A DNA stretch of 64,000 nucleotides from IMGVR_UViG_3300042261_002385:248001-312000; one strand, 5' to 3'. Counted from the stretch's first letter, positions 3,175 through 61,637 are shown. Program-made: numbers and translations. Notes: generated by a model not told the origin, from the sequence alone.

Positions 3175-3816
3175 ATGAAACACATTAGAACATTTGAAAG
3201 TTATCGTATTAGAAAGAATAGAGAAGAAATTATCAAAGAATCTGTTCTTCAAGTAAACGATATCTATAAAGTTAAGACAATGATTGATATTCCACAGTCA
3301 TTAATCAATGCTTATGTGAAAAAAGTGAAAGATACTACAGGTAAAAATCTACGTCAATTTTTTGGTGATGTTGACATCGCTGAAGAAATTGTCAAATTCA
3401 TAAATATGAACAACTTAGACGTTGAGAAACTACCAGGAAACGCACTTATGGGTGGAGCACAAGGTCAAGGACAAAGTCAAGGACAAGCACAGGTTCAAAC
3501 TGACGCTGAAGCTCAGACACAATCACAAGGTCAAGAAGAAGGACAAGCACAAGGACAAGGTCAGGGACAAGCTCAGGGTCAGGGACAAGCACAAGGACAA
3601 GCTCAGGGTCAAGGACAAGCTCAGGGTCAAGGACAAGCTCAGGGTCAAGGACAAGCTCAGGGTCAAGGTCAAGCTCAGGGTCAAGGTCAAGCACAAGGAC
3701 AAGCTCAAGGACAAGCTAAAGAAGAAGAGTTTGAAGAACCACAAGGTCAAGCACAAGGTCAAGCACAAGCCCAGGGTGAAGAAGAAAAACTTCCAGAAGA
3801 AGAGGAAGAAGCTTAA
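3175..3816 (+). CDS. Putative internal head protein with a Gly/Gln low-complexity tail
   Basis: ATG at 3175 gives [10 protein letters not shown], then a ~90 aa globular part, GQAQGQ repeats and an acidic end. Confidence 0.6.
3540..3714 (+). repeat. 18-bp coding tandem repeat (GQAQGQ)n
   Basis: Tandem units of the type cagggtcaaggacaagct. Confidence 0.9.
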
Positions 3817-3837
3817 AAATTACTACAGATATACTTC

Positions 3838-3865
3838 AAAACCCATCAGAAATGATGGGTTTTTT
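3838..3865 (+). terminator. Intrinsic terminator
   Basis: ACCCATCA-GAAA-TGATGGGT followed by a T-run. Confidence 0.85.
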
Positions 3866-3881
3866 ATTTAATATATAATTT

Positions 3882-4496
3882 ATGAGATTTATTAAAACAT
3901 TTGAGGCATACAACGAAGATACTCTTATAATAGTAGATGTGCAAAAATCATTTAGGAAGTTTTTTTCAGAGATGTATCTTAATGAATTAAAAAAATACTC
4001 TAAAAACTTCAATAACGTTTATCAAATATGGGACAATCACATTGATGGAAAAAACGTAGATAAAGAATACCTTTATGATATAAATCCAACAATTCCTATT
4101 CACGATGACCTGTTTTATTTTCCCAACCAAAAAGATATAATTGAAAAACGATACAATTATAAAGTCGATGCGGATTTCTACAAAAAGATTTTAGATTCTG
4201 ATATTTACGAAGAGATTAGTAAAAAAGAAGAAGAGAAAACTCTTAAAAAGGGTGATGTCTTTCCAACAAAAGAAGGAACAATTATAACATTTATCAACAA
4301 TAATCATGTTTGGTTTCATTGCCCAAAGAAGTTATATGAACTACTCATAGAATTGAAAGGAAGAGATGTCGTAATAGTAGGTGGTGCAGATTCAGAATGT
4401 TTAGAAGATATAGTTACTACAGCCGAAAGTTTAGATGTTAAGATAAAAAGAAATTATAAATTTATTTACACAGCTTCAAGTTGTCCTATAAAATAG
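3882..4496 (+). CDS. Isochorismatase/cysteine-hydrolase-like protein
   Basis: LIIVDVQKSF near the N-terminus and VVIVGGADSECL near the C-terminus. Begins MRFIKTFEAY. Confidence 0.55.
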   Translation: MRFIKTFEAYNEDTLIIVDVQKSFRKFFSEMYLNELKKYSKNFNNVYQIWDNHIDGKNVDKEYLYDINPTIPIHDDLFYFPNQKDIIEKRYNYKVDADFYKKILDSDIYEEISKKEEEKTLKKGDVFPTKEGTIITFINNNHVWFHCPKKLYELLIELKGRDVVIVGGADSECLEDIVTTAESLDVKIKRNYKFIYTASSCPIK

Positions 4497-4497
4497 A

Positions 4498-4872
4498 TTA
4501 AAATATAGCGGCATTCACTTCATACCCAGCTATAGTAAAATCAACGGTCATAAACTCTTCATGTTTCTCAGGGTGGTCAAAAAAATTAACCTCAACTGTA
4601 TACTCTATACCTTGAATTTCAGGTATGAATCGATTTATCTGTGATATGATATCAGATTGAACTGATTCAGCCGATAGACGAGTTTCATGAAGTAATTCAT
4701 ATAAATCAGCACCAAGACTTGGCTCTCCAAAAACTTCACCTTTGTTGGTAAAAATTATCATCTCGTATTTCTGAATGATTACTCTAATCACGTCATCCTC
4801 TATGAGATCTAAGTCTCTAAATCTTGGATGACCTGGATAACCTATATAAAAATCTATGAAACTATTTGCCAT
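4498..4872 (-). CDS. gp25: Baseplate wedge protein, gp25-like
   Basis: TNKGEVFGEPSLGADLYELLHE motif, 124 aa. Confidence 0.75.
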   Translation of the reverse strand: MANSFIDFYIGYPGHPRFRDLDLIEDDVIRVIIQKYEMIIFTNKGEVFGEPSLGADLYELLHETRLSAESVQSDIISQINRFIPEIQGIEYTVEVNFFDHPEKHEEFMTVDFTIAGYEVNAAIF

Positions 4873-4883
4873 AGACTTATATA

Positions 4884-5849
4884 TTATATTAAATTATCTC
4901 TATATTTACCAATGACAGTCATAGCTAAGATGAGTGGGTCTGAAACTGATTCTAATTTTGAAGAATAGTCGGAAAGTATATAGTTGCACAAAAATAACTT
5001 TTCAATATCCTTACCATTTTCAATAGACCAATCTACAAAAGGCTTACCTAATAATTTAAATAAAACATCTATTTTCTCAGGTCCAAATATATTGTTTGTG
5101 AAGTGCCAAACTCTTTCATAGTCATAGCTATCATCATATAACATCTCATATAGTTCAGATTTGACTTTATTAGAAACAGAGGTATATTGACTTGATAAAT
5201 GTCCAGTAGATAAGAAATTTTGTAATTCTACCATGATACTTCTAAAATCTGGAAATTTTTTAGTAATTATCGATACTAAATCTTCCTTCGTAACACTAGC
5301 GTTTTCTGAAGTAAGAATTACATTTTTAATTCTTTTGAACATCTCTTGTTTTAGATATCTCTCTTCACTAGTGTCCAAACAATCAAAATTTATTTGAGGA
5401 ATTCGTGATTTTATACCATCTGATATTTTGTTGATATGATTGGTAGTAATTATAAATCTTACATTTTTGTTATACTTTTCAATAAAGGCTTTAAAGGCAT
5501 CTTGGAATTGAGCGGAAACTCTTTCAAACTCATCTAAGAAAATATACTTTACATCAGATTCAGTCTCCATCATAGGTGTATATTTACAAAAATCTTCAAT
5601 TTGGGTTCTTAATATATCAATAGAGGTGAAGAGGGATGAATTTAACTCAAGAAACGGCTTATCTTTTGTATACTTACCTATCAATATTCTAGCTAAACTT
5701 GTTTTTCCTGTTCCATAGTGGCCATAAAATATATAATTACCAGTAACTCCATTTTCAAAATGTTTTCTTATTCTAGGTAAGAGAACTATGTCATCTATAG
5801 ACTTTGGCCTCCATTTTTCCCATAAAAGTAATTGATTGATTGAACTCAT
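4884..5849 (-). CDS. gp44: Sliding-clamp loader AAA+ subunit (gp44/RFC-like)
   Basis: LWEKWRPKSIDDIVL, GHYGTGKTS, FLDEFE and SR motifs. The true start is likely the ATG at 5849. Confidence 0.92.
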   Translation of the reverse strand: MSSINQLLLWEKWRPKSIDDIVLLPRIRKHFENGVTGNYIFYGHYGTGKTSLARILIGKYTKDKPFLELNSSLFTSIDILRTQIEDFCKYTPMMETESDVKYIFLDEFERVSAQFQDAFKAFIEKYNKNVRFIITTNHINKISDGIKSRIPQINFDCLDTSEERYLKQEMFKRIKNVILTSENASVTKEDLVSIITKKFPDFRSIMVELQNFLSTGHLSSQYTSVSNKVKSELYEMLYDDSYDYERVWHFTNNIFGPEKIDVLFKLLGKPFVDWSIENGKDIEKLFLCNYILSDYSSKLESVSDPLILAMTVIGKYRDNLI

Positions 5850-5853
5850 AAAA

Positions 5854-5882
5854 CTTATATCAAAAAAAGTCAACAAAGTTAA
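5854..5882 (-). promoter_or_regulatory. Class II promoter TTAACT-N17-TATAAG, 4 nt upstream of the ATG
   Basis: Read directly. Spacing is identical to the clpS promoter. Confidence 0.55.
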
Positions 5883-14096: not shown

Positions 14097-14124
14097 AATA
14101 TATCAAAGTATATTTAAAAGTTTA
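14097..14124 (-). promoter_or_regulatory. Class II promoter TAAACT-N16-TATATT, 4 nt upstream of the NADAR ATG
   Basis: Read directly from the sequence. Confidence 0.5.
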
Positions 14125-14319
14125 ATAAATCTTCCAATCAGTGATGTGATAAACTCCTCTTTCATCTTGATAAACTTTATTATCATTTTCAAAGAAATCT
14201 GTTTTCAAAACATCATCAACTGTCTTATCAGAAGTTTCTGTCTCAAAATCTAATTCTGGTTCTAATATTTCTTGTTCATATTTGAAATCTTCATATAGCT
14301 TTATCCATTTCATAGTCAA
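14122..14319 (-). CDS. Small acidic protein with the KWIKLYEDF N-terminal tag
   Basis: 65 aa, carries the shared N-terminal motif. Confidence 0.6.
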   Translation of the reverse strand: MTMKWIKLYEDFKYEQEILEPELDFETETSDKTVDDVLKTDFFENDNKVYQDERGVYHITDWKIY

Positions 14320-15068: not shown

Positions 15069-15079
15069 AGTGTATATAT

Positions 15080-15105
15080 AAAAAAACCCACTTAAAAAGT
15101 GGGTT
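15080..15105 (-). terminator. Intrinsic terminator after the tmRNA
   Basis: AACCCACT-TTTTA-AGTGGGTT followed by a T-run on the minus strand. Confidence 0.85.
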
Positions 15106-15113
15106 AATCTTTG

Positions 15114-15539: not shown

Positions 15540-15806
15540 TTAGAAATTTTCAGAACCTTCTTCGAGTTCATACTCATCAGAATCTAAAGAATTTATAATA
15601 TTCTCAGCCTCTTCATAGGAATCATAATTAATCCAAAGAGAACCTTTACCAAATAATTCCTCAGCGTCAACCGCATCTTTATATGTTAAACCATCAGACA
15701 TCATTTTTGGTGTGAGAGCAAATATTCTAAAAGAATCACCAACTCTGTTTATAAAATATTTAACTTTATCGTTACTAAAATCTTCAAATAATTTAATGTA
15801 TTTCAT
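15540..15806 (-). CDS. Small protein with the MKYIKLFEDF N-terminal tag
   Basis: 88 aa, carries the shared N-terminal motif. Confidence 0.65.
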   Translation of the reverse strand: MKYIKLFEDFSNDKVKYFINRVGDSFRIFALTPKMMSDGLTYKDAVDAEELFGKGSLWINYDSYEEAENIINSLDSDEYELEEGSENF

Positions 15807-15820: not shown

Positions 15821-16402
15821 TTAGAAAGGCATGTTATCATCATCTAATCCTTCATCTAAAGTAAAACCAAAAGTAAGGATTCCTCTATTATCTTTTGACT
15901 GCCACATTTCAAATTCTGAATCATATTGAGCCAATATATCTCTTTTTAATTTGTTAGCGACTTCAAAAACTTTAATTACATTTCTAAGAGTTTCTTTTTT
16001 ACCCATGTAAACCTCTATTAAAATTTCATCATTTTTACGAGCGGTCACTCTTACATCTGAAACTCCAGCATTTCTAAACATCTGTCTTAAAAGATAAGTT
16101 AAATGTTCGATATCATCATCTTGTTCATCTTCATATATGTCATATTCATCGTCATCATCGTCATCATCAAATTTAGGATTTGAAGATTTTCTGCCATATT
16201 TGTTATTATCATCATCGTCATCATACCAATCATCAAAATCTCCATAATCTTTAGTAGAGTCATCAGCATAATCATAATCATCATCATCATCAGGCCATCT
16301 AGCTTCGTTTTTCTTATTAGCCGGTAAATTATCATTAAGATGACTTAAGTCATCTTTTCTAATATTTTCTTTAAGATAGTCTAAAAAATTATTTATGTTC
16401 AT
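15821..16402 (-). CDS. Acidic low-complexity protein with a small C-terminal alpha/beta domain
   Basis: Poly-Asp tracts in the N-terminal half. Confidence 0.6.
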   Translation of the reverse strand: MNINNFLDYLKENIRKDDLSHLNDNLPANKKNEARWPDDDDDYDYADDSTKDYGDFDDWYDDDDDNNKYGRKSSNPKFDDDDDDDEYDIYEDEQDDDIEHLTYLLRQMFRNAGVSDVRVTARKNDEILIEVYMGKKETLRNVIKVFEVANKLKRDILAQYDSEFEMWQSKDNRGILTFGFTLDEGLDDDNMPF

Positions 16403-17950: not shown

Positions 17951-18520
17951 TTAAATATGTATTATATTTCTATCTTTATTCTCTATGAATGCTCTACCCA
18001 CGGTCGGTTGATGAGATTCAATAAAAGCATCTTCTTCTTTGGTTCTATAACTTTTATTTTTTAGTTCTTTTATTTTATTTTCAACTTCGATTGGTGGATT
18101 AATACTCACCCTATCTTTGTAACACCAAACTATCTCAGCGAAATTGTTATCTTTGGCTTTGCTGTTCTTTTTAGCAATCTCTGCTGCTTTTTTTAGAATG
18201 TGGTCTGGAATAATATCATCTTTAATTGCTTTAACTAAAACGTGACTTCCCGGATATCCGGATGCATGTAACCAAATGTCCTGAACACTCGAAGCAACTC
18301 CTCCGATAGATTTAGCATATTTACCACAAAAATTACTAGTCAAAAAATGATTTGACTCTTTATTTCTACCCCAGTAAACATCATATGAATTATCAAGATT
18401 CAAATCGTCTATGATTTTTTTATGTTTTATATCAACACCACTCTTACTGAACTCTTTTAATTGACTGTTTATGAGATTTTCTTTTAATACAAAATCACTG
18501 TAATTTCTAGTTATCTTCAT
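17951..18520 (-). CDS. Stand-alone NFACT-R (RqcH/Rqc2 C-terminal RNA-binding) domain protein
   Basis: YWGRNKESNHFLT, DIWLHASGYPGSHVLVK and AAEIAKKNSKAK match RqcH VGKNN.QN..LT, DIWLH.K.IPGSHV and AA..AA..SKAK. Start is the ATG at 18520. Confidence 0.85.
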   Translation of the reverse strand: MKITRNYSDFVLKENLINSQLKEFSKSGVDIKHKKIIDDLNLDNSYDVYWGRNKESNHFLTSNFCGKYAKSIGGVASSVQDIWLHASGYPGSHVLVKAIKDDIIPDHILKKAAEIAKKNSKAKDNNFAEIVWCYKDRVSINPPIEVENKIKELKNKSYRTKEEDAFIESHQPTVGRAFIENKDRNIIHI

Positions 18521-19435: not shown

Positions 19436-21208
19436 TTAGTTCAAGTATTGATTACCATCAACAACTTTAATAGTCATAAATTGTTTTTGTGGATACCAAC
19501 CAACTTCAGTTACTGCATATCTAGATCTTAGTAACATTCTTGGTGCGAATGTTGCCTCAGAAATGATAGAGATTGATTGAGCCATCAAATAAGGAACGAA
19601 AATGATACCTGGTTGGTCAGGATTGTTCTTTCTACCAAGAACGATTCTGTTATCGTTATATCTCATATATGGGTCAACATAGATAGAAATATCACCGATA
19701 GAACCTACTGGGTAAAGTTGACCAGAAGCATTCATTTTAGCTTTAACTGGATTAATAGTATAACCAGAGATATCAGAAAGAGCTGCAGCAAGACCCCCGT
19801 TTGTGATAAGGTATTGAGCTGGACCTACACGACCTTCAGTAGCGATGTAGTTAGAAGCGTGAGCAATCTTAGTGATAAGTTTTCTTTGAACAGCGTGAGT
19901 TGTCTCACCACCGATACCACCACCTGCAGTTACATATGATGTATCTAAGTCAAAGATTGTTGGACTAGTAACTCCTGTGTAAGCAGCAGGACCAGAGTAA
20001 AGTGGAGCTGTAGTTCTGTTCAAATCACCCAATTCAAAGATTTTAGCAACGATTTGCTTAGAAATTGTTTGAGATAATTCGTTAACAAGAATTGATTCCA
20101 TTTTTTGAACGATATCCATACCTGTGTTAGCTTTGATATCTTCGATTTCAGTTCTTCTAAGAGCTGAAGATACTTCAATAGTACCTACTGCTACTGACTT
20201 AGAAGAAATTTTAGGACCGATAACTCCAGCATAACTGTTATCATCTGTGTCTCTATCCATTGGATAGTTACCATTGAAACCATCACCACCTTGAGTCCAG
20301 TTTGCAGAGAAACCAGGGATGTGATCTTCAAGAGCTGAAATCAACTCAATTGAAGCGAATCCACTGTTAATTGTAATTCCAGCTACACTTGTGATTTGAG
20401 AAATCATTGATTGTGTAGGGTTGAATGAGTTTCTATTTTGGTCAAAACTCCACATCGCAAGTGTTCCTGTAGTAGAAGTGTAAGGATTTGTTCCTGTATG
20501 AGCAGTGTTAGCTTGTCTGTAAGCTTTGAACATAGGGAAACCATCGATACGAGAGAAACCTAAGAACTCAACAATACCTTGTTTAGAAGCTGTTCCATTC
20601 AATGTAGTTGAAATAGTTGAACCTAAGTTATTTTGTCCTGTAGTTCCTAATGAGAAAAAGAATTGTCCATTTTGTAAACCACCAGAAGACTGAAGGATAG
20701 TAGCTCCGTTTCCAGTTTGCATAGCAGTTGCTAACGTAGATGATGTAGCACCAGCGTTTAATTTAAATACTTGTGGTCTTTCATCAGCGTCACCAGATTT
20801 AGTGTCGTCATAACGGAAATCTACATAAAGTAAATCGATTTTCGGACCTGGAGATGGCTTAACAGCAACAAGGTCAAGTCCGATAGTTTGAGCTGCGATT
20901 TTCATTGCAACTGGTAATAAGTTTTGACCAACATCACCAGAACCAGCAACACCACCTGAACCATATGAGAATGATGTAGCAGAGTTACCGTAAGGTGAAG
21001 TTTGACCAGCAAGTGTAGATGGTTGTGGAGATACAACACTACCCATACCTGATACGTTAGAAGCGTTAACGTAAGCGTTCTCGTTGATTGAGTGGAATTC
21101 AGCATATTCAGCCATCCATTCCATTCTATCACCAGTAACACCCATGTTTTCCAAAACTGGAGACCACTTCTTAATAGCTTTTGATTTGTCTATTCTAATG
21201 TGTGACAT
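19436..21208 (-). CDS. gp23: Major capsid protein, T4 gp23-like
   Basis: KKWSPVLE, AAQTIGLDLVAVKP, EDIKANTGMD, ELSQTISKQI, VGSIG..YVDPY and FVPY..PRMLLRSRY motifs. Confidence 0.95.
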   Translation of the reverse strand: MSHIRIDKSKAIKKWSPVLENMGVTGDRMEWMAEYAEFHSINENAYVNASNVSGMGSVVSPQPSTLAGQTSPYGNSATSFSYGSGGVAGSGDVGQNLLPVAMKIAAQTIGLDLVAVKPSPGPKIDLLYVDFRYDDTKSGDADERPQVFKLNAGATSSTLATAMQTGNGATILQSSGGLQNGQFFFSLGTTGQNNLGSTISTTLNGTASKQGIVEFLGFSRIDGFPMFKAYRQANTAHTGTNPYTSTTGTLAMWSFDQNRNSFNPTQSMISQITSVAGITINSGFASIELISALEDHIPGFSANWTQGGDGFNGNYPMDRDTDDNSYAGVIGPKISSKSVAVGTIEVSSALRRTEIEDIKANTGMDIVQKMESILVNELSQTISKQIVAKIFELGDLNRTTAPLYSGPAAYTGVTSPTIFDLDTSYVTAGGGIGGETTHAVQRKLITKIAHASNYIATEGRVGPAQYLITNGGLAAALSDISGYTINPVKAKMNASGQLYPVGSIGDISIYVDPYMRYNDNRIVLGRKNNPDQPGIIFVPYLMAQSISIISEATFAPRMLLRSRYAVTEVGWYPQKQFMTIKVVDGNQYLN

Positions 21209-21287: not shown

Positions 21288-23387
21288 TTAAATGTTTTTG
21301 AATCTTTCTAAAATTGCTTGAGCTTCTTTATCAGAAAGTTTATCCTCTTGGATAAGAGCTTCGTGAGAAACTAATTTTTTAGTAACAGATTCATTCTTTT
21401 TGAGATTTCTAGTCAACCAGAAATGCTCAACTTGTGATTCAGTCTTCAATACATCTTCTGGATAAAGTCTAGCTTGTGACAAGATAGATTTTTTAGAAGT
21501 GTCGTTCAACTGTTCCCAGATTGGCTTAACGTTTTCAGGCATCAATCTGATTACTCTTTCTTCAAGAGATTCATTCTTTGTAGACAGTGCTTCAGCAATC
21601 AATGTAAGAACTTCCTTCTGTGTAAAATAACTTCTTTCGTTTATGTGAAGTTTAACAGTTTCTTGTTCATCGTTAGATAATGCATAAAAGCTATCAACTT
21701 GTGACTTGTTTAAGAATTTTAAGAAATTCAAGTCAGTTGTTTCAGAAACTTTACGTTTTTTAGCTTCTTCAATTAATTTATTAATAGACTCAGATAATTC
21801 AGAATCATCGTGACCATGAACCTCATGAGATTCGTGTCCATATTTTTCTTCGTTGTCATCATCATTGTTTTCGTGAGAATAAGCTTCTTCGTCATGTGAA
21901 GCAGGAACTCCGTGATAATTTTCTTCATTATCATCATCGTTGTTGTGATTCTCTTCTTCGTGATTTTCAAAACCATAAGCTGATAGCGAAGCGAAAGCCT
22001 CTTCATCATGGTTTTCAAATAATTTACCACCTTTAGAATTTAATTTTTCAACAATCATTCCTTGATAAGAAATTGATCTATCAAGATTTTCAGCGATATA
22101 CTCAGAGTAGGCGATGTTATCATCTAAATGCTCCGCGATATACTCAGAGTAAGCGATGTTACCTTCAACATGCTCAGCTAAGTATTCAGAATACGCGATA
22201 GAGTTATCAACGTGCTCAGCTAAGTATTCAGAGTAAGCGATGTTTTTATCAAGATTCTCAGCAATATACTCAGAGTAAGCGATGTTTTTATCAAGATTCT
22301 CAGCAATATACTCAGAGTAAGCGATGTTCTTATCAAGGTTTTCTGCTAAGTATTCTGAGTAAGAAATGTTTTTGTCTAAGTTTTCAGCGATATACTCAGA
22401 ATAAGAGATATTCTTATCTAAGTTTTCAGCTAGATACTCAGAATATTCAATATTCTTATCTAAATTTTCAGCAACATACTCAGTATAGTTAATTGCTTTT
22501 TCAAGATTTTCTGCTAAATAGTCATTATGTTTAGCAAGTTTTTCAGTTGTGTTTCTAAGAGATTTGTTCTCATTAACAACAACTTGGATTTTTTCAGCTA
22601 AGTAGTCAAGATATTTAACTACTTGTGAATTAGTTGAGTTCAATTCTTCGTAGTATTCAAGTAATTGCTCTAATTTCTTAGGAGCCATATTACCTTTAGA
22701 AATTGCACTCTTAACTTCTTTTTTAGTTGAAGCAATCTCGTTTACTAAATACTTTGAATAATCAGTCAACTGTTTCTTAGTAACAAAGTCGTTTCTGTTC
22801 ATGTTGAATAATTCATTTATTTTTGACTCGTCGGACATTTCATATATCCTAAAGTTAGATTTTGGGTTTGTATAACCTAAAGACTCATTAAGTGTTTTTA
22901 CTGACATTTTTGCTGAAGCAAAACCTGGATCAGCTACAATGTCATATGTGAATAATTTTTTCAATGAAACAGATCCGTCAGATTCAGTGATACCAGCCGC
23001 TCTAGAAGAAACGAATACCGGACAACCATCATCAACTAATGCTTTCGCTTCTTTACCCCAATAAGTGCTAAGAAGTCTAATTTCACCAGCAACAATGTTT
23101 TGTTCTTTAAGATAGTTTGCTTTAGTGATAATGTGTGATGCTCTTGCTAAAGAAGTGTCAAAAACATCTGGGTGATCAAACTCACCATAAACAGCTCCTA
23201 AACTGTTCATTCTTTCATTCAACTCATCCAACGCTGGTAAGAATCTGTCTGCTGTATAGATACGTTCATTACGGTTTTTCACTCCAAATTCAGTGAAAGT
23301 TCCACCTAAAACGTAATCTTTTTTACCAGATGCATTTTCTCGTATTAGAGCATTCGTTGAATTTTCTACGATTAATACTGATTTCAT
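21288..23387 (-). CDS. gp21: Prohead protease (gp21-like) fused to a scaffold/core protein
   Basis: KNRNERIY, GEFDHP, SHII, VSSRAAG and TYDIVADPGF in the N-terminal ~170 aa, followed by a long coiled-coil region. Confidence 0.92.
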   Translation of the reverse strand: MKSVLIVENSTNALIRENASGKKDYVLGGTFTEFGVKNRNERIYTADRFLPALDELNERMNSLGAVYGEFDHPDVFDTSLARASHIITKANYLKEQNIVAGEIRLLSTYWGKEAKALVDDGCPVFVSSRAAGITESDGSVSLKKLFTYDIVADPGFASAKMSVKTLNESLGYTNPKSNFRIYEMSDESKINELFNMNRNDFVTKKQLTDYSKYLVNEIASTKKEVKSAISKGNMAPKKLEQLLEYYEELNSTNSQVVKYLDYLAEKIQVVVNENKSLRNTTEKLAKHNDYLAENLEKAINYTEYVAENLDKNIEYSEYLAENLDKNISYSEYIAENLDKNISYSEYLAENLDKNIAYSEYIAENLDKNIAYSEYIAENLDKNIAYSEYLAEHVDNSIAYSEYLAEHVEGNIAYSEYIAEHLDDNIAYSEYIAENLDRSISYQGMIVEKLNSKGGKLFENHDEEAFASLSAYGFENHEEENHNNDDDNEENYHGVPASHDEEAYSHENNDDDNEEKYGHESHEVHGHDDSELSESINKLIEEAKKRKVSETTDLNFLKFLNKSQVDSFYALSNDEQETVKLHINERSYFTQKEVLTLIAEALSTKNESLEERVIRLMPENVKPIWEQLNDTSKKSILSQARLYPEDVLKTESQVEHFWLTRNLKKNESVTKKLVSHEALIQEDKLSDKEAQAILERFKNI
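22065..22526 (-). repeat. Eleven tandem 42-bp (14-aa) repeats of the type SEY(I/L)AENLDKNIAY
   Basis: 462 bp = 11 x 42, read from the protein and the DNA. Confidence 0.92.
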
Positions 23388-29770: not shown

Positions 29771-30535
29771 TTATTTAAATTGTTTATCGTATAGATTTCT
29801 CTTTAGTTCCATAACTTTACTTATGTAACCATTTCTTCTAAGGAGTTTAAATACTAAATTTCCAATAGAAAATTCACCACTTTCGGATTCTAAACCACTT
29901 TTTCTATAGTTTTTAATTTTCTGCCAAACCTTTTTGATTTTTGGTTCTAACTCATCATAGTCTTTTTCTTTTGATTCATCAATGATATCATCAATTACCA
30001 TAATTATTGTTTTGGATTTCTCTTTAATCATTCTTTCATCCGGTTTGAAGTCAACTTTTACTGGTTTCTTAACCCATTTATCATTTAGTAGAGAGTAAAC
30101 ACCTCCCATTTTACCATCTTTGATTTCTTCATGCATTATTTCATCATCTTGTATACATACTTCAACTTCATATCCTTTAATCTTAATATCATGTTGTTCG
30201 TTCCAGACTTTTTTTGCATAATCACAAAGTTTTTCGACTAAATCGTAGTCCTCATCAACTTCTTTAAAATCTATTGTGATGTGTAGGTCATAATCTGAAT
30301 ACTTCTCAGACCAATTGTAGTTACAAAGTGAACCACAAAGAACAATATCTTTGACTTCTGCTTGAATTTCAGTTCCATTGAAAAAATCTTGACCAATTTG
30401 TAACAGTTGCTCTCTGACTTCTTTGTCTAATTCAAAATTATCCCACAACTTCTCATTCAATTCTTTTTGAATCTTAAATGATTTAATTGGGGTGAATGTT
30501 CCTCTTCTAAACTCAAAAAATTTTTCCATTTTCAT
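29771..30535 (-). CDS. Pol-beta-superfamily nucleotidyltransferase
   Basis: hGS-x-DhDh signature (LCGSLCNYNWSEKYSDYDLH) and a third acid in YEVEVCIQD. Start is the ATG at 30535. Confidence 0.7.
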   Translation of the reverse strand: MKMEKFFEFRRGTFTPIKSFKIQKELNEKLWDNFELDKEVREQLLQIGQDFFNGTEIQAEVKDIVLCGSLCNYNWSEKYSDYDLHITIDFKEVDEDYDLVEKLCDYAKKVWNEQHDIKIKGYEVEVCIQDDEIMHEEIKDGKMGGVYSLLNDKWVKKPVKVDFKPDERMIKEKSKTIIMVIDDIIDESKEKDYDELEPKIKKVWQKIKNYRKSGLESESGEFSIGNLVFKLLRRNGYISKVMELKRNLYDKQFK

Positions 30536-52000: not shown

Positions 52001-52200
52001 CCAACAAGGTCAGAAACTAAATAGTATCCATACTGTTGATTTCCGTCAATATATTGAAAAGTTCCGTTAACTACTAACTTTTGATTTGCATTATCCCAAC
52101 GTAAATTATTAAAATTCTCACTAACAACACTATTGGTGCCAAGAAAAAGAATCGAACCTTGCGAGGCACCTCGTATTTGTTTAATATTCATTTGAGCCAT
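43033..52200 (-). CDS. 3055-aa giant fibre protein with eight Gly-[Ser/Thr]-Ser tracts and six ~160-aa beta modules
   Basis: The GNLTISGT.TTV.T.NLTV.D.II.L..G..RG....WDES module is typical of T4-like phage fibres, with Gly at every third residue between modules. Confidence 0.85.
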   Translation of the reverse strand: MAQMNIKQIRGASQGSILFLGTNSVVSENFNNLRWDNANQKLVVNGTFQYIDGNQQYGYYLVSDLVGNASWTASIPSTSGTSGSSGTSGSSGSSGTSGISGVSGTSGESGTSGTSGSSGSSGTSGTAGTSGSSGTSGSTGTSGTSGSSGTSGSSGTSGTEGTSGSSGTSGLSGSSGSSGTSGSSGSSGSSGTSGTEGTSGTSGTSGTSGSSGTSGSSGTSGTSGSSGTSGSSGSSGSSGTSGSSGSSGTSGSSGTSGSSGLLSLTGTTNNGVITLDGTAPNATVESNLTFDGSTLAVTGDVTVSGNLTISGTTTTIDTINLTVEDPIILLASTQSGSPTLDSGFMVRRGTGSTQAFIWDESAQSFAAVSTNDPATANSINISSYSNLQVGGLTTSQIKITTGAQANYILMSDATGLAFWTASVPGTSGTSGSSGSSGTSGSSGSSGTSGTSGSSGTSGSSGSSGTSGSSGTRGTSGSSGTSGSSGTSGSSGTSGLSGIDGVDGSSGSSGSSGSSGSSGSSGSSGSSGSSGTSGTSGTSGSSGSSGTSGTSGSSGTSGSSGTSGSSGSSGTSGSSGSSGSSGSSGSSGSSGTSGTAGTSGSSGSSGSSGSSGTSGSSGSSGTSGSSGSSGTSGSSGSSGTSGSSGSTGTSGSSGSSGSSGTSGSSGLLSLSGTTDNGVITLNGSAPNATVESNLTFDGNTLSVTGDLTVSGNLTISGTSTTVNTVNLTVEDSIILLASTQSGSPTLDSGFMVKRGTGLTQAFIWDESAKSFAAVSTNDSDVSGIVSINGYSNLQVGGLTTSQIKITDGAQNGYILVSDSNGLASWTSSIPGTSGTSGSSGSSGSSGTSGSSGSSGSSGTSGSSGTSGSSGSSGTSGSFGTSGSSGISGVSGTSGESGTSGSSGNSGTSGSSGTSGSSGTSGSSGSSGSSGSSGSSGSSGTSGSSGSSGTSGSFGTSGTSGSSGSSGTSGSSGTSGSSGSSGTSGSSGSSGTSGSSGSSGTSGTSGSSGSSGSSGTSGSSGSSGTSGSSGTSGTSGSSGTSGTSGSSGTSGTSGSSGSSGTSGTSGSSGTGFNTILQPADYRILTATGSSTNSAVAQTNLTFNQYSQLGITGSIKFDTGFTYSGVPAQVAGEIRWDDGNGVPSVVLKGGNVNLQIGSENVVLVYNDSGTTLNDGDLVYISGAQGNRPSVKLASASNESTQNVLGMVTETIPAGNEGFVTDFGIVNNLNTIGLTAGLPIYLSTTPGTYTQNPLDAPLHSNLVGWVVRVHASVGSIFIRPETGYELSELHDVLNYATSSISDMSYLGWSASGAYWQVMPAPIGSSGTSGSSGSSGSSGTSGSSGTGFNTVSNPGDNRILTSDGTVNAANAESNLTFDGSTLNISGNLVVTGSFSVLGSASVVNTSSLVVSDPIIALGHSQSGSPSLDEGFMFVRGTGVTQAFIWDESDDTFALISTNDDHTVNGNVNISSYSNLRLNGLTASQLKLTTGAQSGYILMSDSTGLAFWTSSTPGTSGTSGSSGTSGTSGSSGTTGTSGSSGSSGSSGSSGSSGTSGTSGASGSSGTSGSSGSSGTSGSSGSSGTSGSSGTSGTSGSSGSSGTSGSSGTSGTSGSSGTSGSSGTSGSSGSSGTSGSSGSSGTSGTSATSGSSGTSGSTGSSGTSGSSGSSGSSGSSGTTGTSGTAGTSGTSGFSGSSGTSGSSGTSGSSGTSGTRGTSGSTGTSGSSGTSGSSGFSGVDGTSGSAGTSGSSGTSGSSGSSGSSGSSGSSGSSGSSGTTGTSGSSGTSGSSGLLSLTGTTNNGVITLDGSAPNATVESNLTFDGNTLAVTGDVTVSGNLIISGTSTTVNTTNLTVQDPLILLASTQSGTPTLDSGFMINRGTGATQAFIWDESAKSFVAISTNDSSTNTTLSILNYSNLQVGGLTTSQIKITTGAQANYILMSDSTGLGFWTSSVPGTSGTSGSSGSSGTSGSAGTSGTSGTSGSSGTSGSSGTRGTSGTSGTSGSAGTSGSTGTSGSSGTSGLSGVDGTSGTFGTSGSAGSSGTSGSTGTSGTSGTSGSSGSSGTSGTSGTNGTSGTSGSSGSSGSSGTSGSSGSTGTSGSSGSSGSSGSSGSSGTSGSSGSSGTSGSSGSSGTSGSSGTSGTSGSSGTSGTSGSSGTSGTSGSSGTSGTSGTSGSSGSSGSSGSSGTSGSTGTSGSSGTSGTRGTSGSSGLLSLTGTTNNGVITLDGSAPNATVESNLTFDGSTLTVTGNIVATGDLTISGTTTTIDTVNLTVEDPIILLASTQSGSPTLDSGFMVRRGTGLTQAFIWDESAQSFAAVSTNDNSTSSPITISGYSNLQVNGLTASQIKITTGAQANYILMSDATGLAFWTASVPGTSGTSGSSGTSGSSGTSGSSGTSGSTGTSGSAGSSGTSGTSGTSGSSGSSGTSGTSGSSGSSGTSGSTGTSGSSGTSGSSGSSGTSGSSGTSGSSGSSGSSGTSGTSGSSGTSGSSGSSGSSGTSGTSGSSGTSGSSGSSGSSGTTGSSGTTGTSGTSGFSGVDGTSGSAGTAGSSGTRGTSGSSGSSGSSGTSGSSGTSGTSGTSGSSGTSGSSGTSGSSGTSGTSGSSGTSGSSGTGGTSGSSGTSGSSGLLSLTGTTNNGVITLDGSAPNATVETNLTFDGSTLAVTGDVTVSGNLTISGTSTTVNTTNLTVEDSLILLASTQSGAPTLDSGFMINRGTGATQAFIWDESAKSFAVVSTNDSSTTNVVNISSYSNLQVNGLTASQIKITTGAQANYILMSDATGLAFWTASVPGTSGTSGSSGSSGTSGTSGTSGSSGTSGSSGSSGTSGSSGSSGSSGTSGTSGTSGSSGTSGSSGSSGTSGSSGSSGSSGTSGTSGSSGTGFNTILQPLDFRILTATGSSTNSAVAQPNFTFNPNTQLLSLTGSMTISGTPSGNSLTINTPAGQVFSIGDVTLIGDSQVPSLYTTKKVTLSSGNNSIYSFATASYTGAFVDYTLSSGGNARSGNLMAIWNGSNLKFTDNSTLDIGTTNGVTFSFIISGTYAVLQASADASGWIVKTILRSI
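43611..43810 (-). repeat. Exact 99-bp tandem duplication
   Basis: The sequence at 43611 recurs at 43710. Confidence 0.88.
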
Positions 52201-57181: not shown

Positions 57182-57185
57182 TCAT

Positions 57186-58984: not shown

Positions 58985-58985
58985 C

Positions 58986-59294
58986 TTAATTAATTGAATT
59001 TTTATTCAAAGTATGAAGGTCTAAAAAATCGTCCTCTTCTATTTCTCTTTCTACGCTTAAGCCTTCTATTTCATCATCATCTAAACGGTCCCCTACAGTT
59101 TCATACCATTCATCTTTGCTCAATTCTTCAATTGTTGAACTTTTACAGAATTTACAGTTATCAACCTCGTTGTTTAGAACTTTCCATAGAGCATCACAAT
59201 CATCACAGTGATAATATAGTGTCAAATCTGCTTTAGATGCTAATGGCAAAGTCTGGCTAAAATCAAAAGTCTCAAATTTCTTAATCCATCTCAT
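58986..59294 (-). CDS. Small zinc-ribbon protein with the MRWIKKFETF tag
   Basis: CxxC...CxxC. Confidence 0.65.
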   Translation of the reverse strand: MRWIKKFETFDFSQTLPLASKADLTLYYHCDDCDALWKVLNNEVDNCKFCKSSTIEELSKDEWYETVGDRLDDDEIEGLSVEREIEEDDFLDLHTLNKNSIN

Positions 59295-59366
59295 ACACTC
59301 TATATATAAAAATTAGTAATTCATTTTATTTTCAAAATTAGAGTTGACCTGATTAATATATACTTT

Positions 59367-60269
59367 ATGAATCTAAAACAACTAAAAGATTTCTACAATA
59401 AGAAGCCTGTTGAATTTGTTATTAAAGAACACTACGACTTAATTGAAGACAATGAGTATATTCCAAGATTTTCACTTAAGAATGTAAAAGATATTTCTAA
59501 TATTCCTATTAACAAACCGATTAAGTATTCCGATGATATAATGGCAAAAGCTATAAAATTTGGAATGATATTCTTAATCAACTATAAAGGTGAAGATGAT
59601 AAACATTTTGCTGGTCATGAGCGCGTAATTTACCCAATGGTTTTAGGTAGGAGTTCAAAAGGTAAAACTCTCTTAAGAGCTTGGCACTTAAACGGATGGT
59701 CTGTTTCACAAAAAAGACACATCAATAAGATTTGGAGACTATTTAGAACAGACAGAATTCTATCTATGACTTTCACTGGTTCGTTTTATAGACTTCCTCC
59801 TTCAGGTTATAATATGAATGATAAAGGTATGAGAGGTGGTTTTATAGCTAAGGCAGACTTTAATGAGATTAGAAGAAATCAACAGAACTTAGTTAATCAA
59901 AATAAGATTCAAAATAGAGAAGAAGTTACTATGGGTGACCAAGATAGGAAATTTGTTTCTATAAAAGTCAGTGAAACATCTACTATCTTAGATTTAACAA
60001 AAGCTATGGATAATGCCTATATCAACAATATAAAAGATATGGCTAACGTAAGATTATCTTTTCTTCGCAGCATCTATGGAAACAAATACATTGCTATATT
60101 AGGAGCCTTAGGGCAACCAGGCAACACCGTTAAAGTTTTCACAGATAAAGGAGTTCAAGTTGGTGTTTTTAAAGTATTAGATTCAATAACTGGTCAAGTG
60201 TTGAGAAGTATAAAGAACGTTAAAGGAAACACAATATACGACCTATACTTATTTGACTCTAAGGTATAA
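59367..60269 (+). CDS. WYL-like domain protein
   Basis: INY..ERVIYPMVLG..LLRAWH..WRLFRTDRILSM follows the WYL strand pattern. Confidence 0.65.
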   Translation: MNLKQLKDFYNKKPVEFVIKEHYDLIEDNEYIPRFSLKNVKDISNIPINKPIKYSDDIMAKAIKFGMIFLINYKGEDDKHFAGHERVIYPMVLGRSSKGKTLLRAWHLNGWSVSQKRHINKIWRLFRTDRILSMTFTGSFYRLPPSGYNMNDKGMRGGFIAKADFNEIRRNQQNLVNQNKIQNREEVTMGDQDRKFVSIKVSETSTILDLTKAMDNAYINNIKDMANVRLSFLRSIYGNKYIAILGALGQPGNTVKVFTDKGVQVGVFKVLDSITGQVLRSIKNVKGNTIYDLYLFDSKV

Positions 60270-60270
60270 A

Positions 60271-60296
60271 AAAACCTCTCAATCTTGAGAGGTTTT
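60271..60296. terminator. Bidirectional terminator
   Basis: AAAACCTCTCA-ATCT-TGAGAGGTTTT between convergent genes. Confidence 0.85.
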
Positions 60297-60313
60297 ATTT
60301 TTTTTATATCATA

Positions 60314-60913
60314 TTATTTAATATCACTAGACTCAATAAGTGTGTATGTGAACGAGTTTCCGTGAATATCTCTAGCTTTTCTACAGATTTTCATTAACGC
60401 TTCAAAGTCTGCTGATTTCTTGAAAACTTGACACCCTTCAGACCAGTTTTCAACATACGTTGAATCAGCACCAGCTTTATGTATATTAATACCAAAAACA
60501 CCTTCAGCAATTTTATTCTCATCATAATTCAAATCTTTGTTAGCATCCCTATAAACCTTAACATTTTTTAATTGTCTTAGAGCCTCATATTTACCTTGAT
60601 GCAAACCAATTCCATGTGAACCCCTATATTGACCTTCAACAAGTCTTGCAACACCAGCCGCATTGTGATATTCTAGAACTCCCTTTTTACCAGGATCAGT
60701 TGTTGCTGGCCAGCAGTGAAATTTCCACTCACCATTTTCTTTGTAAGATAAAGTAATACAATCATCAAAAGCATTTGTTACTTTTTGACCTGTTGATGAA
60801 TTTCTAATACCAATAATATTAACATCAAAACCCTTATTATTTATATCTTCAAAGTAGACATATCCTTTTGATTTGACCGCTACCTCAACTTGTTCTCTTG
60901 TATAACAACTCAT
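60314..60913 (-). CDS. L,D-transpeptidase-like (His/Cys) protein, candidate endolysin
   Basis: ATTDPG, VYRD and GINIH-x-WSEGCQV motifs. No signal peptide. Confidence 0.55.
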   Translation of the reverse strand: MSCYTREQVEVAVKSKGYVYFEDINNKGFDVNIIGIRNSSTGQKVTNAFDDCITLSYKENGEWKFHCWPATTDPGKKGVLEYHNAAGVARLVEGQYRGSHGIGLHQGKYEALRQLKNVKVYRDANKDLNYDENKIAEGVFGINIHKAGADSTYVENWSEGCQVFKKSADFEALMKICRKARDIHGNSFTYTLIESSDIK

Positions 60914-60923
60914 ATTTTATAAT

Positions 60924-61637
60924 TTATTTTTTGAAATCTACGAAACTTTTTATTCCTCTCATCTCATCTTCTAAATCTTTGTTAGCTAAATGACCTTCAG
61001 TTTCTTCATGAGATGGCTCTTCATAATGTGTGTAATTGAGGTCTTCACTTGGAACATCGTGACCTGCAACAAAGTTAAAAACATGTTCAATGTTCTCAGC
61101 TGCTACAGAGATGTGGTCTGAAGCCCAATCGTGCTCAGACAACATGTTATCTAAAGTGTGCTCATCCATTTCTAGCATTTCATCTACTAATCTTTTGATA
61201 GTCTCTAAATTTGAGAAAAACATATAATTTTGAGTTTCTTGATGTTCTCTAAGTCTTTTAACTGTTCTAGATCTCTTGTAGTTTCTAGACTCACTTAGTA
61301 ATGCTTCATCGTTATTATAAGCATCCTGTTCCTCGTGATCCTTACACATAAGTCTCAATTCTTCATCTGAACACATCTCTAATTCATCTTCTGAGTAACC
61401 ACATCTGCAAAGGTAGTTACACATTGATTCTCTGTCCATAGAATTCATATTTTCGTTATGTGAATTCATATGAGAGTGATCATCGTGACTATCAGCCATA
61501 GTTCTACACATCATTTCTAACTCATCATCAGACTTGTCATGTAATTCATGCATGCTACAACCACATACATTACATAAGTATTTACACATCTCTTCTCTAT
61601 CTTGAGAATAAGATTCAAATTTTTTAATTAACCTCAT
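60924..61637 (-). CDS. Cys/Met/His-rich protein with an internal duplication and the MRLIKKFESY tag
   Basis: Two DRExMCxYLC..C..EL...SDxEL.MC repeats and a C-terminal HDWASDHI domain. Confidence 0.6.
   Translation of the reverse strand: MRLIKKFESYSQDREEMCKYLCNVCGCSMHELHDKSDDELEMMCRTMADSHDDHSHMNSHNENMNSMDRESMCNYLCRCGYSEDELEMCSDEELRLMCKDHEEQDAYNNDEALLSESRNYKRSRTVKRLREHQETQNYMFFSNLETIKRLVDEMLEMDEHTLDNMLSEHDWASDHISVAAENIEHVFNFVAGHDVPSEDLNYTHYEEPSHEETEGHLANKDLEDEMRGIKSFVDFKK

What the first reader, a model, noticed from the sequence alone, without database searches (positions are those of the whole stretch)
3175..61637. Shared 10-residue N-terminal tag on unrelated proteins: a putative capsid-targeting sequence
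Six unrelated ORFs begin M-[KR]-[HFWYL]-I-[KR]-[TLK]-[FY]-E-[SADT]-[FY]: starts at 3175, 3882, 14313, 15806, 59294 and 61637. Looser versions occur at 16402, 17934, 18520, 29071 and 30535. T4 internal proteins carry a 10-aa capsid-targeting sequence (MKTYQEFIAE) removed by gp21 after Glu. If analogous, this tag defines an injected proteome that includes a hydrolase, a zinc ribbon, a metal-rich protein and perhaps a peptidase, the NFACT-R protein and the NTase.
Basis: partly seen in the sequence, partly recalled or inferred. Interest (0 to 1): 0.7.

Follow-up and report, generated by a model that had tools for sequence, protein, structure and literature searches.

The report
Shared N-terminal tag in huge phages
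About one in ten proteins of this 436-kb phage, and of its uncultured relatives, starts with the same ten-residue peptide, which most likely addresses them to the inside of the assembling phage head as the T4 capsid-targeting sequence does, though no protein data yet show this.

Summary
All six ORFs start with the tag at the stated coordinates (6 matches against 0.001 in shuffled N-termini). Genome-wide, 52 of 508 called genes (10%) begin M-[KR]-[YHW]-[LIV]-[KR]-x-[FY]-[EK]-x-F. About 30 more carry a shorter variant, [KR]-[YF]-x-x-F-[ILV]-x-E-S, very close to T4's MKTYQEFIAE. Only 2 of 2053 internal Met positions match. Beyond the tag the proteins are unrelated. Synonymous codon use inside the tag equals the genome's, so selection acts on the peptide.

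The tag is virus-specific. It occurs 14-45 times in each of four related 460-640-kb phages and in at least 120 IMG/VR stretches, but only 57 times in 596 Gb of prokaryote genomes.

The window encodes a T4 gp23-like capsid protein and a gp21-like prohead protease. Many tags end in [LIV]-x-E-[SAG], the T4 cleavage pattern. Tagged genes use the promoter class of structural genes, not host-type promoters. In cultured phage PAU, 18 ORFs share a sister tag, including the annotated scaffolding protein and two annotated internal capsid proteins.

The best reading is a capsid-targeting propeptide (confidence 0.55). Packaging and cleavage are untested, and the acidic cargo and tagged enzymes remain caveats.

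The parts
3175..3816 (+). Tagged ORF, 213 aa. The tag [10 protein letters not shown] is encoded at 3175-3204. The rest is acidic, with a (GQAQ)n low-complexity stretch and a Glu-rich tail.
   Evidence: (PSSM 21.3). No Pfam family. Orthologues in IMG/VR keep the tag.
3882..4496 (+). Tagged ORF, 204 aa. The tag MRFIKTFEAY is encoded at 3882-3911 and sits four residues before the first predicted beta-strand, LIIVDVQ. The protein is highly conserved.
   Evidence: There are 1165 homologues, the best 120 listed being 74-100% identical; all 13 aligned keep the tag. The LR756501 orthologue starts MKVIKFSDYLKES. In the AF2 model the tag has pLDDT 35 and lies outside the fold, but the model is poor (pLDDT 60).
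14122..14313 (-). Tagged ORF, 63 aa, acidic. The tag MKWIKLYEDF is encoded at 14284-14313.
   Evidence: (PSSM 25.2).
15540..15806 (-). Tagged ORF, 88 aa, acidic. The tag MKYIKLFEDF is encoded at 15777-15806. It is the fifth gene downstream of the capsid gene on the same strand.
   Evidence: (PSSM 24.3).
58986..59294 (-). Tagged ORF, 102 aa, acidic, with four Cys. The tag MRWIKKFETF is encoded at 59265-59294.
   Evidence: (PSSM 19.2). No Pfam family.
60924..61637 (-). Tagged ORF, 237 aa, rich in Cys and His (10 C, 16 H) and acidic. The tag MRLIKKFESY is encoded at 61608-61637.
   Evidence: (PSSM 16.6). No Pfam or PDB match.
15821..16402 (-). ORF, 193 aa, with a loose T4-like start MNINNFLDYLKEN and long poly-Asp stretches like the acidic T4 prohead core protein gp67.
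17951..18520 (-). ORF, 189 aa, with a loose tag MKITRNYSDFVLKEN and an NFACT-R domain. It is the second gene downstream of the capsid gene.
   Evidence: PF05670, E 8.8e-8.
29771..30535 (-). ORF, 254 aa, with a loose tag MKMEKFFEF and weak similarity to a nucleotidyltransferase palm domain.
62985..63407 (+). ORF, 140 aa, with a loose T4-like start MNKVDKFLEFFLE.
19436..21208 (-). T4 gp23-like major capsid protein, 590 aa. Its N-terminus (KKWSPVLE) is homologous to the T4 gp23 propeptide (NKWKPLLE).
   Evidence: (PF07068, E 4.2e-28).
21288..23387 (-). Prohead protease of the T4 gp21 family in the N-terminal half of a 699-aa protein. The C-terminal half is presumably scaffold, as in annotated relatives.
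   Evidence: PF03420, below cut-off; phrog_207 head maturation protease, E 1.3e-30. The capsid gene has the same kind of upstream neighbour in PTm1, pT24 and MA9V-1.

Best explanation
The decapeptide is a lineage-specific form of the T4-type capsid-targeting propeptide. It is a short amphipathic N-terminal helix (basic residues, then aromatic-x-x-aromatic, then Glu). I infer that it docks newly made proteins onto the scaffolding core on which the gp23-like shell assembles. The gp21-family prohead protease, which cuts after Glu, would then remove it, leaving the cargo inside the head to be delivered with the DNA.

Shown here:
- The tag exists at N-termini only.
- It sits on unrelated proteins.
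- It is selected as a peptide, not as DNA.
- It is virus-specific and shared by a clade of huge phages.
- It co-occurs with T4-type head genes.
- It often ends in a T4-like cleavage pattern.
- Tagged genes carry the promoter motif used by structural genes.

Inferred, not shown: binding to the core, cleavage, packaging and injection.
For: 1. Specificity. 52 of 508 N-termini match against 2 of 2053 internal Met positions. A generic aromatic-x-x-aromatic pattern matches 12.6% of N-termini against 0.75% elsewhere.

2. Unrelated cargo. 48 of 52 tagged proteins have no BLASTP relative in the genome beyond residue 15. Domains of different kinds carry the tag: Pterin_4a, GATase, an Asp/Glu racemase-like domain, a cyanophycin-synthetase N-domain and DUF5824, plus GH108 on a variant-tagged protein.

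3. Peptide-level selection. AAA/AAG, TTT/TTC, TAT/TAC and GAA/GAG ratios inside the tag equal genome-wide ratios.

4. T4-type head. A gp23-like capsid protein and a gp21-family protease lie in the window. Proteases of this group cut after Glu (PMC5694885).

5. Likeness to T4. T4 ipII and ipIII start MKTYQEFIAE|A and gp24 starts MAKINELLRE|S, read from the T4 record. Here there are MISKYLEFINE|S, MIKKFSRFIKE|S and MKHLKSYKLFE|S. [LIV]-x-E-[SAG] in residues 6-17 occurs in 19 of 82 tagged proteins, against 5% of untagged N-termini and 2.6% of internal windows. [LIV]-x-E occurs in 66% against 21% and 15%. The helical hydrophobic moment is 0.45, the same as the T4 sequence, against 0.32 for untagged N-termini.

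6. Lineage dialects.
- Type A counts are 38 in this genome and 28, 45, 27 and 14 in LR745206, LR756502, LR756504 and LR756500, with controls of 0-1.
- LR756501 has MIKKF-x-x-F-I-N-E instead.
- An orthologue keeps a tag while changing dialect.

7. Cultured phage PAU. 18 ORFs start MK[TS][LI]xxL[YF]E, and 13 of them lie in or beside the head gene block. They include the depositor-annotated scaffolding protein gp152 and internal capsid proteins gp142 and gp154, several ending L-N-E|A/S.

8. Timing. The phage promoter box TTAATATATA, which precedes the capsid, protease and tail genes, lies upstream of 51% of tagged genes against 27% of untagged (odds ratio 2.9, p 2e-5). The host-type TAnnTTTG box lies upstream of 3.7% against 14.6% (p 0.006).

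9. Like T4 internal-protein genes, tagged genes are small (none over 541 aa), clustered (14 adjacent pairs against 5.2 expected) and depleted among genes shared with a distant relative (8% against 18%).

10. Virus specificity. Only 57 matches occur in 596 Gb of prokaryote genomes.
Against: - No proteomic or structural datum shows packaging or cleavage.
- T4 internal proteins are highly basic. Here 77% of tagged proteins have pI below 6.
- 10-16% of all genes is far more than in T4 (three ORFs). The set includes metabolic-type enzymes that are odd capsid cargo.
- In the main form of the tag the conserved Phe10 lies after the conserved Glu8, and only about half have Leu/Ile/Val at the P3 position, so the cut site is not fixed.
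- T4 gp61.1, not known as a head protein, also starts MKTFKEFIKE, so such a start is not proof of packaging.
- Most tagged genes lie far from the head genes.
- Two of eleven nearly complete tag-bearing records gave no gp23 match and a third only a weak one below the cut-off.
- The PAU labels are the depositor's, and their basis is not known to me.
Confidence: 0.55

Rival explanations
1. The tag is a docking peptide for a destination or partner other than the capsid. Candidates are a phage-encoded chaperone, an assembly factory or compartment, or a protease adaptor that controls the stability of late accessory proteins.
For: - The tag is an amphipathic peptide under peptide-level selection on unrelated proteins.
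- The cargo includes cytoplasmic-type enzymes and is acidic.
- Tagged genes are scattered over the genome.
- The main form of the tag lacks a fixed cleavage site.
Against: - No candidate receptor was found.
- The T4-like variant with [LIV]-x-E-[SAG] ends points to the head.
- So does the PAU sister tag on the annotated scaffolding protein and internal capsid proteins inside the head gene block.
- So does the shared promoter class with structural genes.
Confidence: 0.22
2. The tag serves expression. It would be an A+T-rich start of the reading frame, or a nascent peptide, that favours initiation or early elongation in a host without Shine-Dalgarno pairing.
For: - Upstream regions lack Shine-Dalgarno sequences and are A-rich.
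- Many genes have the promoter box only 0-9 nt from the ATG, suggesting leaderless or near-leaderless mRNAs.
- Lys at position 2 is common in all N-termini of a relative as well.
Against: - Codon choice inside the tag is the same as elsewhere, and residue order is conserved through different codons.
- The capsid, protease and tail proteins all lack the tag.
- Tags change dialect between lineages in step, and orthologues keep them.
- The tag is not tied to either promoter spacing.
Confidence: 0.08
3. The shared start is a historical leftover. Either the proteins are one fast-diverging paralogous family, or new genes were captured behind a mobile promoter-plus-start cassette, with no present function for the peptide.
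For: - Tagged genes form tandem arrays.
- A few pairs, and one family bearing the T4-like variant, are true paralogues.
- Mobile promoter cassettes are known in T4-type phages (PMC2839356, listed).
Against: - Domains of different kinds carry the tag.
- There is no DNA-level conservation beyond what the peptide requires.
- Many tagged genes have no promoter box at all.
- The tag is kept in orthologues at 30-70% identity and across genomes whose capsid proteins are 34-70% identical. That requires purifying selection on the peptide.
Confidence: 0.05

Closest known systems
T4 capsid-targeting sequence of internal proteins IPII and IPIII (MKTYQEFIAE)
   Same: - It is an N-terminal peptide of about 10 residues shared by otherwise unrelated, fast-evolving small proteins.
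- It has the form MK, aromatic-x-x-Phe, then [IL]-x-E followed by Ala or Ser.
- It is amphipathic.
- The phage has a gp23-type shell and a gp21-type protease that cuts after Glu.

The variant tags here (MISKYLEFINES, MIKKFSRFIKES) and in LR756501 (MIKTFDEFINES) are near matches.
   Different: - The main form here (MKYLKLFExF) is longer at the N-terminal side. It has Glu at position 8 and a conserved Phe after it.
- It marks 52-82 genes per genome, not three.
- The cargo is acidic rather than highly basic and includes enzymes.
- Nothing is shown experimentally.
Sphingomonas phage PAU head-module proteins starting MK[TS][LI]xxL[YF]E (gp142, gp152, gp153, gp154 and others)
   Same: PAU is a cultured jumbo phage whose capsid protein is a distant relative (25% identity). 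Eighteen of its ORFs share an N-terminal tag of the same style: MKTLSKLFED in PAU gp146 against MKYLKLFEDN here. Several end in L-N-E|A/S. Tagged proteins include the annotated scaffolding protein and internal capsid proteins.
   Different: - It has one more residue between the first Leu/Ile and the Leu-aromatic-Glu.
- It marks 18 genes, most of them in or beside the head gene block.
- This genome has no exact match to the PAU form and PAU has no match to the form here.
- The annotations are the depositor's.
N-terminal propeptides of phiKZ and SPN3US head and ejection proteins
   Same: These are giant phages that package dozens of proteins. A protease related to T4 gp21 removes the propeptides after Glu, and the N-termini of some paralogues are conserved (PMC5694885).
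   Different: Those propeptides are mostly 100 residues or longer and are cut at [A/S/G]-x-E. They belong to paralogous families, not to one short tag on unrelated proteins.
Encapsulin cargo-loading peptides (from my own knowledge, not tested here)
   Same: A short terminal peptide addresses unrelated enzymes to the interior of a shell built from an HK97-fold protein.
   Different: The peptide is usually C-terminal and is not cleaved. The shells are cellular, with no portal and no DNA.

Membership tests
T4-type capsid-targeting sequence (CTS) | A short N-terminal peptide (10-20 residues) shared by otherwise unrelated proteins of one phage | tested here: met
   52 of 508 N-termini carry it, and 48 of these proteins have no relative beyond residue 15.
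T4-type capsid-targeting sequence (CTS) | The phage builds its head in the T4 way, with a gp23-family shell and a gp21-family prohead protease plus scaffold | tested here: met
   PF07068, E 4.2e-28. phrog_207 head maturation protease, E 1.3e-30. PF03420 is only below its cut-off. The capsid N-terminus is homologous to the T4 gp23 propeptide.
T4-type capsid-targeting sequence (CTS) | The tag ends at a protease site of the form [L/I]-x-E followed by a small residue | tested here: inconclusive
   [LIV]-x-E-[SAG] at residue 11-12 occurs in 19 of 82 tagged proteins, against 5% and 2.6% in controls. [LIV]-x-E occurs in 66%, against 21% and 15% in controls. The main form has no fixed site.
T4-type capsid-targeting sequence (CTS) | Sequence likeness to MKTYQEFIAE | tested here: inconclusive
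   The variant forms match [KR]-[YF]-x-x-F-[ILV]-x-E. The main form matches only in pattern: basic, aromatic-x-x-aromatic, Glu.
T4-type capsid-targeting sequence (CTS) | The cargo is small, highly basic internal protein | tested here: not met
   Tagged proteins are small (median 186 aa), but 77% have pI below 6 and only 4% above 9.
T4-type capsid-targeting sequence (CTS) | Tagged proteins are present in proheads or virions and the tag is removed | not testable with these tools
   No proteomic data are available. Complex prediction gave no answer.
T4-type capsid-targeting sequence (CTS) | The tag is sufficient to package a foreign protein | not testable with these tools
   This needs an experiment.
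phiKZ/SPN3US-type head-protein propeptides | Long propeptides (often over 100 residues) cut at [A/S/G]-x-E, on paralogous inner-body or ejection proteins | tested here: not met
   Conservation ends at residue 10-13 and the cargo proteins are unrelated.
Secretion or lipoprotein signal peptide | A hydrophobic core of about 7-15 residues after a basic N-terminus | tested here: not met
   The tag alternates charged and aromatic residues and is followed by acidic, polar sequence.
Mobile promoter/start cassette (DNA-level repeat) | Conservation at the nucleotide level beyond what the peptide requires, tied to a promoter | tested here: not met
   Synonymous codon use in the tag equals the genome's. 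About half of the tagged genes lack the promoter box.

The most novel reading that the evidence does not exclude
A globally distributed clade of huge (about 0.4-0.65 Mb), probably Bacteroidota-infecting phages loads 50-80 different proteins per genome into the capsid, enzymes included, by means of one ten-residue address label. The packaged and presumably injected proteome of uncultured megaphages could then be read straight from sequence. The label would come in lineage dialects (this clade, LR756501, PAU, T4) that co-evolve with the head core.
Probability: 0.4. Interest if true: 0.8.

Novelty: new variant of a known kind. Interest (0 to 1): 0.68.

Why it matters
If the tag is a capsid address, it gives a sequence-only way to list the proteins that uncultured huge phages carry into the cell. 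It would mean these phages deliver a far larger and more varied protein load than T4, including enzymes and many orphan proteins that are candidates for early host take-over and counter-defence.

It would also show that the T4 targeting principle is old and widespread, with lineage-specific dialects. It would offer a portable tag for loading cargo into large capsids.

If the tag serves another purpose, a ten-residue label on a tenth of a viral proteome is still an unexplained sorting signal worth solving. I found no description of it in the papers searched, including a 2026 review of jumbo phages.

Tried and rejected
- **Complex prediction.** The 699-aa protease-scaffold protein with the 88-aa tagged protein gave no answer (score 0.00). 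It counts neither for nor against binding.
- **AlphaFold2 of the 204-aa tagged protein.** From 13 close homologues the mean pLDDT was 60. The tag was unstructured at pLDDT 35. The model was too poor for a fold search, so none was run.
- **Family and PDB searches.** Pfam found nothing for the six window proteins. PDB sequence searches found nothing useful for three of them; the hits of the 3175 protein are low-complexity matches to its GQ repeat.
- **A tag-specific promoter.** I first thought the box upstream of tagged genes was specific to them. It is the general phage promoter motif and is only enriched there.
- **Paralogy.** Rejected by BLASTP and by the different Pfam domains.
- **DNA-level or RNA-level signal.** Rejected by codon usage.
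- **Cultured relatives with the same tag.** pT24, PTm1, MA9V-1, MaF61, Lak-B5 and a cyanophage gave background counts for all three patterns. Only PAU has a dialect of its own.
- **T4 IPI.** It did not match my T4 pattern. The third T4 match is gp61.1, not ipI.
- **Capsid cleavage site.** Aligning the capsid proteins did not place the T4 gp23 cleavage site reliably in this clade.
- **Literature.** Searches for a described tag found nothing.

Full report
**What the window is.** The window is bases 248001-312000 of a single 436,265-bp viral record with 31% G+C. Its major capsid protein (window 19436-21208, minus strand) belongs to the T4 gp23 family (PF07068, E 4.2e-28).

The closest capsid proteins come from the uncultured huge phages:
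- LR756502 and LR745206: 70% amino-acid identity.
- LR756501 and LR756504: about 51%.
- LR756500: 34%.
- The Prevotella Lak megaphages: 29%.
- Cultured jumbo phages of Bacteroidota and Sphingomonas (pT24, MA9V-1, PAU, PTm1): 25-31%.

The gene just upstream (21288-23387, minus strand, 699 aa) is a head maturation protease of the T4 gp21 type. It matches phrog_207 at E 1.3e-30, and PF03420 at E 5e-4 to 1.5e-5, below that family's cut-off. It resembles the fused "prohead core scaffolding protein and protease" annotated in PTm1. The capsid protein's N-terminus (KKWSPVLE) is homologous to the T4 gp23 propeptide (NKWKPLLE). The phage therefore builds its head in the T4 way.

**The observation.** A looser expression matches 30, against 0.10. 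Without the Met, the core occurs 11 times in all six frames of the genome, and 10 of those follow a start Met directly.

A position matrix built from these starts splits the proteome cleanly. Fifty-two N-termini score 14 or more and the next best scores 7. At score 12 or more, only 2 of 2053 internal Met positions and 6 of 128,215 positions of any kind match. The consensus is M-[KR]-[YHW]-[LIV]-[KR]-x-[FY]-[EK]-x-F, and conservation ends at about residue 10. One sub-form reads MKHLKSYKLFES.

**A second variant.** A further group of N-termini carries a shorter variant, [KR]-[YF]-x-x-F-[ILV]-x-E-S. Examples are MKLKRYLQFIKES, MISKYLEFINES and MIKKFSRFIKES. Twenty N-termini (3.9%) match it, against 0.11% of internal positions. 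With a generic aromatic-x-x-aromatic pattern the total is about 82 genes, or 16%.

The starts at 17934 and 29071 do not.

**What the tag sits on.** Beyond residue 15, 48 of the 52 tagged proteins have no BLASTP relative in the genome. Only six have a Pfam family, and each family is different:
- a Pterin-4a dehydratase domain that begins at residue 11, right after the tag;
- a class-I glutamine amidotransferase;
- a weak Asp/Glu racemase match;
- a cyanophycin-synthetase N-domain;
- DUF5824;
- a weak P-loop kinase match.

A GH108 lysozyme-like protein carries the shorter variant. None of the six window proteins matches any Pfam family.

Tagged proteins are never large (maximum 541 aa, median 186). 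They are mostly acidic: 77% have pI below 6, against 59% of the rest. They are clustered, with 14 adjacent pairs against 5.2 expected (p below 1e-4).

**Peptide or nucleic acid.** Inside the tag, synonymous codon ratios for Lys, Phe, Tyr and Glu are the same as in the rest of the genome. The variable positions change amino acid class in a conservative way through unrelated codons, for example TAT, CAT and TGG at position 3. Selection therefore acts on the peptide. The peptide has the periodicity of an amphipathic helix. Its mean hydrophobic moment is 0.45, against 0.32 for untagged N-termini and 0.34 for shuffled tags. The T4 sequence scores 0.45.

**Distribution.**
- A degenerate DNA pattern for the tag gives 38 matches in this genome. 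It gives 28, 45, 27 and 14 in LR745206, LR756502, LR756504 and LR756500, with 0-1 for the reversed-pattern control.
- It gives background counts in LR756501, Lak-B5, pT24, PTm1, MA9V-1, PAU, MaF61 and a cyanophage.
- In those stretches I find 230 tagged ORFs. Sixty stretches hold two or more and one holds eight.
- CheckV completeness values indicate that most of these contigs are fragments of very large genomes.
- Eight of the eleven records that are at least 75% complete (or are complete published genomes) have a gp23 match over the family cut-off.
- The same pattern finds only 57 places in 596 Gb of prokaryote genomes. Several of those lie on multi-hit contigs that look like mis-binned phage.

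The tag is a viral feature, not a host one.

**Dialects.**
- LR756501 lacks the main form. In 400 kb of it, 42 of 481 called genes start with the short variant, for example MIKTFDEFINES, MIKKYIQFINEA and MVKRYKQFINEG.
- The highly conserved 204-aa tagged protein of the window (3882) has over a thousand homologues; all 13 that I aligned keep the tag.
- Its LR756501 orthologue, 30% identical, starts MKVIKFSDYLKES.
- Other orthologue pairs also keep a tag while changing its form.
- Tagged genes are under-represented among genes shared with LR756501 (8% against 18%, p 0.017).

**Comparison with T4, read from the T4 record.**
- ipII and ipIII start MKTYQEFIAE followed by Ala.
- gp24 starts MAKINELLRE followed by Ser.
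- gp61.1, which is not known as a head protein, starts MKTFKEFIKE.

The literature states that the T4 sequence targets the internal proteins to the scaffolding core and is cut off once by gp21. It also states that gp21 and its giant-phage relatives all cut after Glu.

Here, nineteen tagged proteins have [LIV]-x-E-[SAG] with the Glu at residue 11 or 12 (one at 16). This is 23%, against 5% of untagged N-termini and 2.6% of internal windows. [LIV]-x-E occurs in 66%, against 21% and 15%. In the main form the conserved Glu is at position 8, with Leu, Ile or Val at position 6 in about half the cases and a conserved Phe two residues later. A single fixed cut site cannot be named for it.

**A cultured relative.** In Sphingomonas phage PAU, 18 ORFs start MK[TS][LI]xxL[YF]E, with a control count of 0. 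Thirteen of them lie between 90 and 113 kb, in and next to the head gene block. They include the depositor-annotated scaffolding protein gp152 and the annotated internal capsid proteins gp142 and gp154. Several read ...KLNE followed by Ala or Ser. PAU gp146 starts MKTLSKLFED, and a tagged protein here starts MKYLKLFEDN.

This is the only link to an annotated head-interior role. It rests on the depositor's labels, and I could not check their basis.

**Timing.** One motif dominates upstream regions: TTAATATATA. Of its 169 AATATATA cores in the genome, 129 lie within 50 nt upstream of a gene start. It precedes the capsid, protease and large tail genes.

A second motif, TAnnTTTG, is the known -7 promoter element of Bacteroidota (from established knowledge). 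It precedes 65 other genes.

Tagged genes have the first motif more often than untagged genes: 51% against 27%, odds ratio 2.9, p 2e-5. They have the second far less often: 3.7% against 14.6%, p 0.006. This suggests that tagged proteins are made with the structural proteins and not as host-polymerase early genes. The assignment of the two motifs to temporal classes is an inference.

**Interpretation.** The evidence fits a T4-type capsid-targeting propeptide that has diversified into lineage dialects and expanded to a tenth or more of the proteome in one clade of huge phages.

Several points do not fit a simple copy of T4:
- the acidity of the cargo;
- the presence of enzymes;
- the sheer number of tagged genes;
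- the lack of a fixed cleavage site in the main form.

Acidic, low-complexity proteins are, however, typical of prohead core components. T4 gp67 ends in a long Asp/Glu run. The loosely tagged 193-aa protein three genes beyond the capsid gene has poly-Asp stretches of the same kind. Some tagged proteins may therefore be core or inner-body material rather than injected effectors.

I put the capsid-targeting reading at 0.55. A docking tag for another destination gets 0.22, an expression function 0.08, a functionless leftover 0.05, and the rest is unassigned.

**Limits.**
- Gene calls and starts come from my own simple caller.
- The position matrix was refined on the data.
- IMG/VR counts are lower bounds.
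- The complex prediction gave no answer and the one structure model was poor.
- No proteomic, transcript-start or structural evidence bears on the mechanism.

Noticed in passing
whole genome; in the window, for example upstream of 21208, 23387, 42935, 52200 and 58199: There are two promoter-like motif classes. TTAATATATA has 129 of its 169 AATATATA cores within 50 nt upstream of genes, at two preferred distances from the ATG (0-9 nt and 15-25 nt). The short distance suggests leaderless or near-leaderless mRNAs. TAnnTTTG, the Bacteroidota -7 element, lies upstream of 65 other genes, often with a TTG about 20 nt further up. This points to a Bacteroidota host and to temporal gene classes.
   Followed up: partly
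window 37848-52200 (-): Two giant ORFs of 1695 and 3055 aa have 42-46% G+C in a 30% G+C genome, with many long antisense ORFs. They are probably repetitive fibre or surface proteins. In pT24 the gene next to the capsid gene is a very long repeat-domain protein.
   Followed up: no
window 14322-15158 (-) and 16402-17934 (-): Two M28-family metallopeptidase genes sit in the gene row just downstream of the capsid gene, in addition to the serine prohead protease. They could clear released propeptides or scaffold fragments.
   Followed up: partly
window 23974-25851 (+): A complete RNase II/R-type exoribonuclease (RNB, E 5e-113, with cold-shock and S1 domains) is encoded divergently from the prohead protease gene.
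   Followed up: no
window 3460-3745 (+), inside the 3175 ORF: A long (GQAQ)n low-complexity repeat followed by a Glu-rich tail lies in a tagged protein. It caused spurious PDB matches.
   Followed up: no
window 3882-4496 and its flanks: The same protein and the same neighbours lie on a JGI metagenome contig of 522,324 bp. The 436-kb record, which IMG/VR labels 'provirus' at 95% completeness, may therefore be a trimmed part of a larger genome. The neighbour at 4884-5876 (-) is a T4 gp44-like clamp loader.
   Followed up: partly
genome 382354 (+), outside the window: A tag-like sequence, KRWIRTFESF, lies without a Met seven residues before the C-terminal end of a 325-aa ORF. The ORF follows an array of tagged genes. 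It may be the remnant of a tagged gene start fused to the upstream frame.
   Followed up: no
T4 record NC_000866, 18966-19130 (-), locus L255: T4 gp61.1, a 54-aa hypothetical protein next to the primase gene, starts MKTFKEFIKE. This is almost the capsid-targeting sequence of ipII and ipIII, yet it is not annotated as a head protein.
   Followed up: partly
genome 77294 (+) and 432906 (-), outside the window: Two paralogous proteins of about 545 aa both carry the tag, one with three extra residues before it (MRQLKYLKLFEAF). The tag can therefore sit slightly inside the N-terminus, or the start of that gene is mis-called.
   Followed up: no
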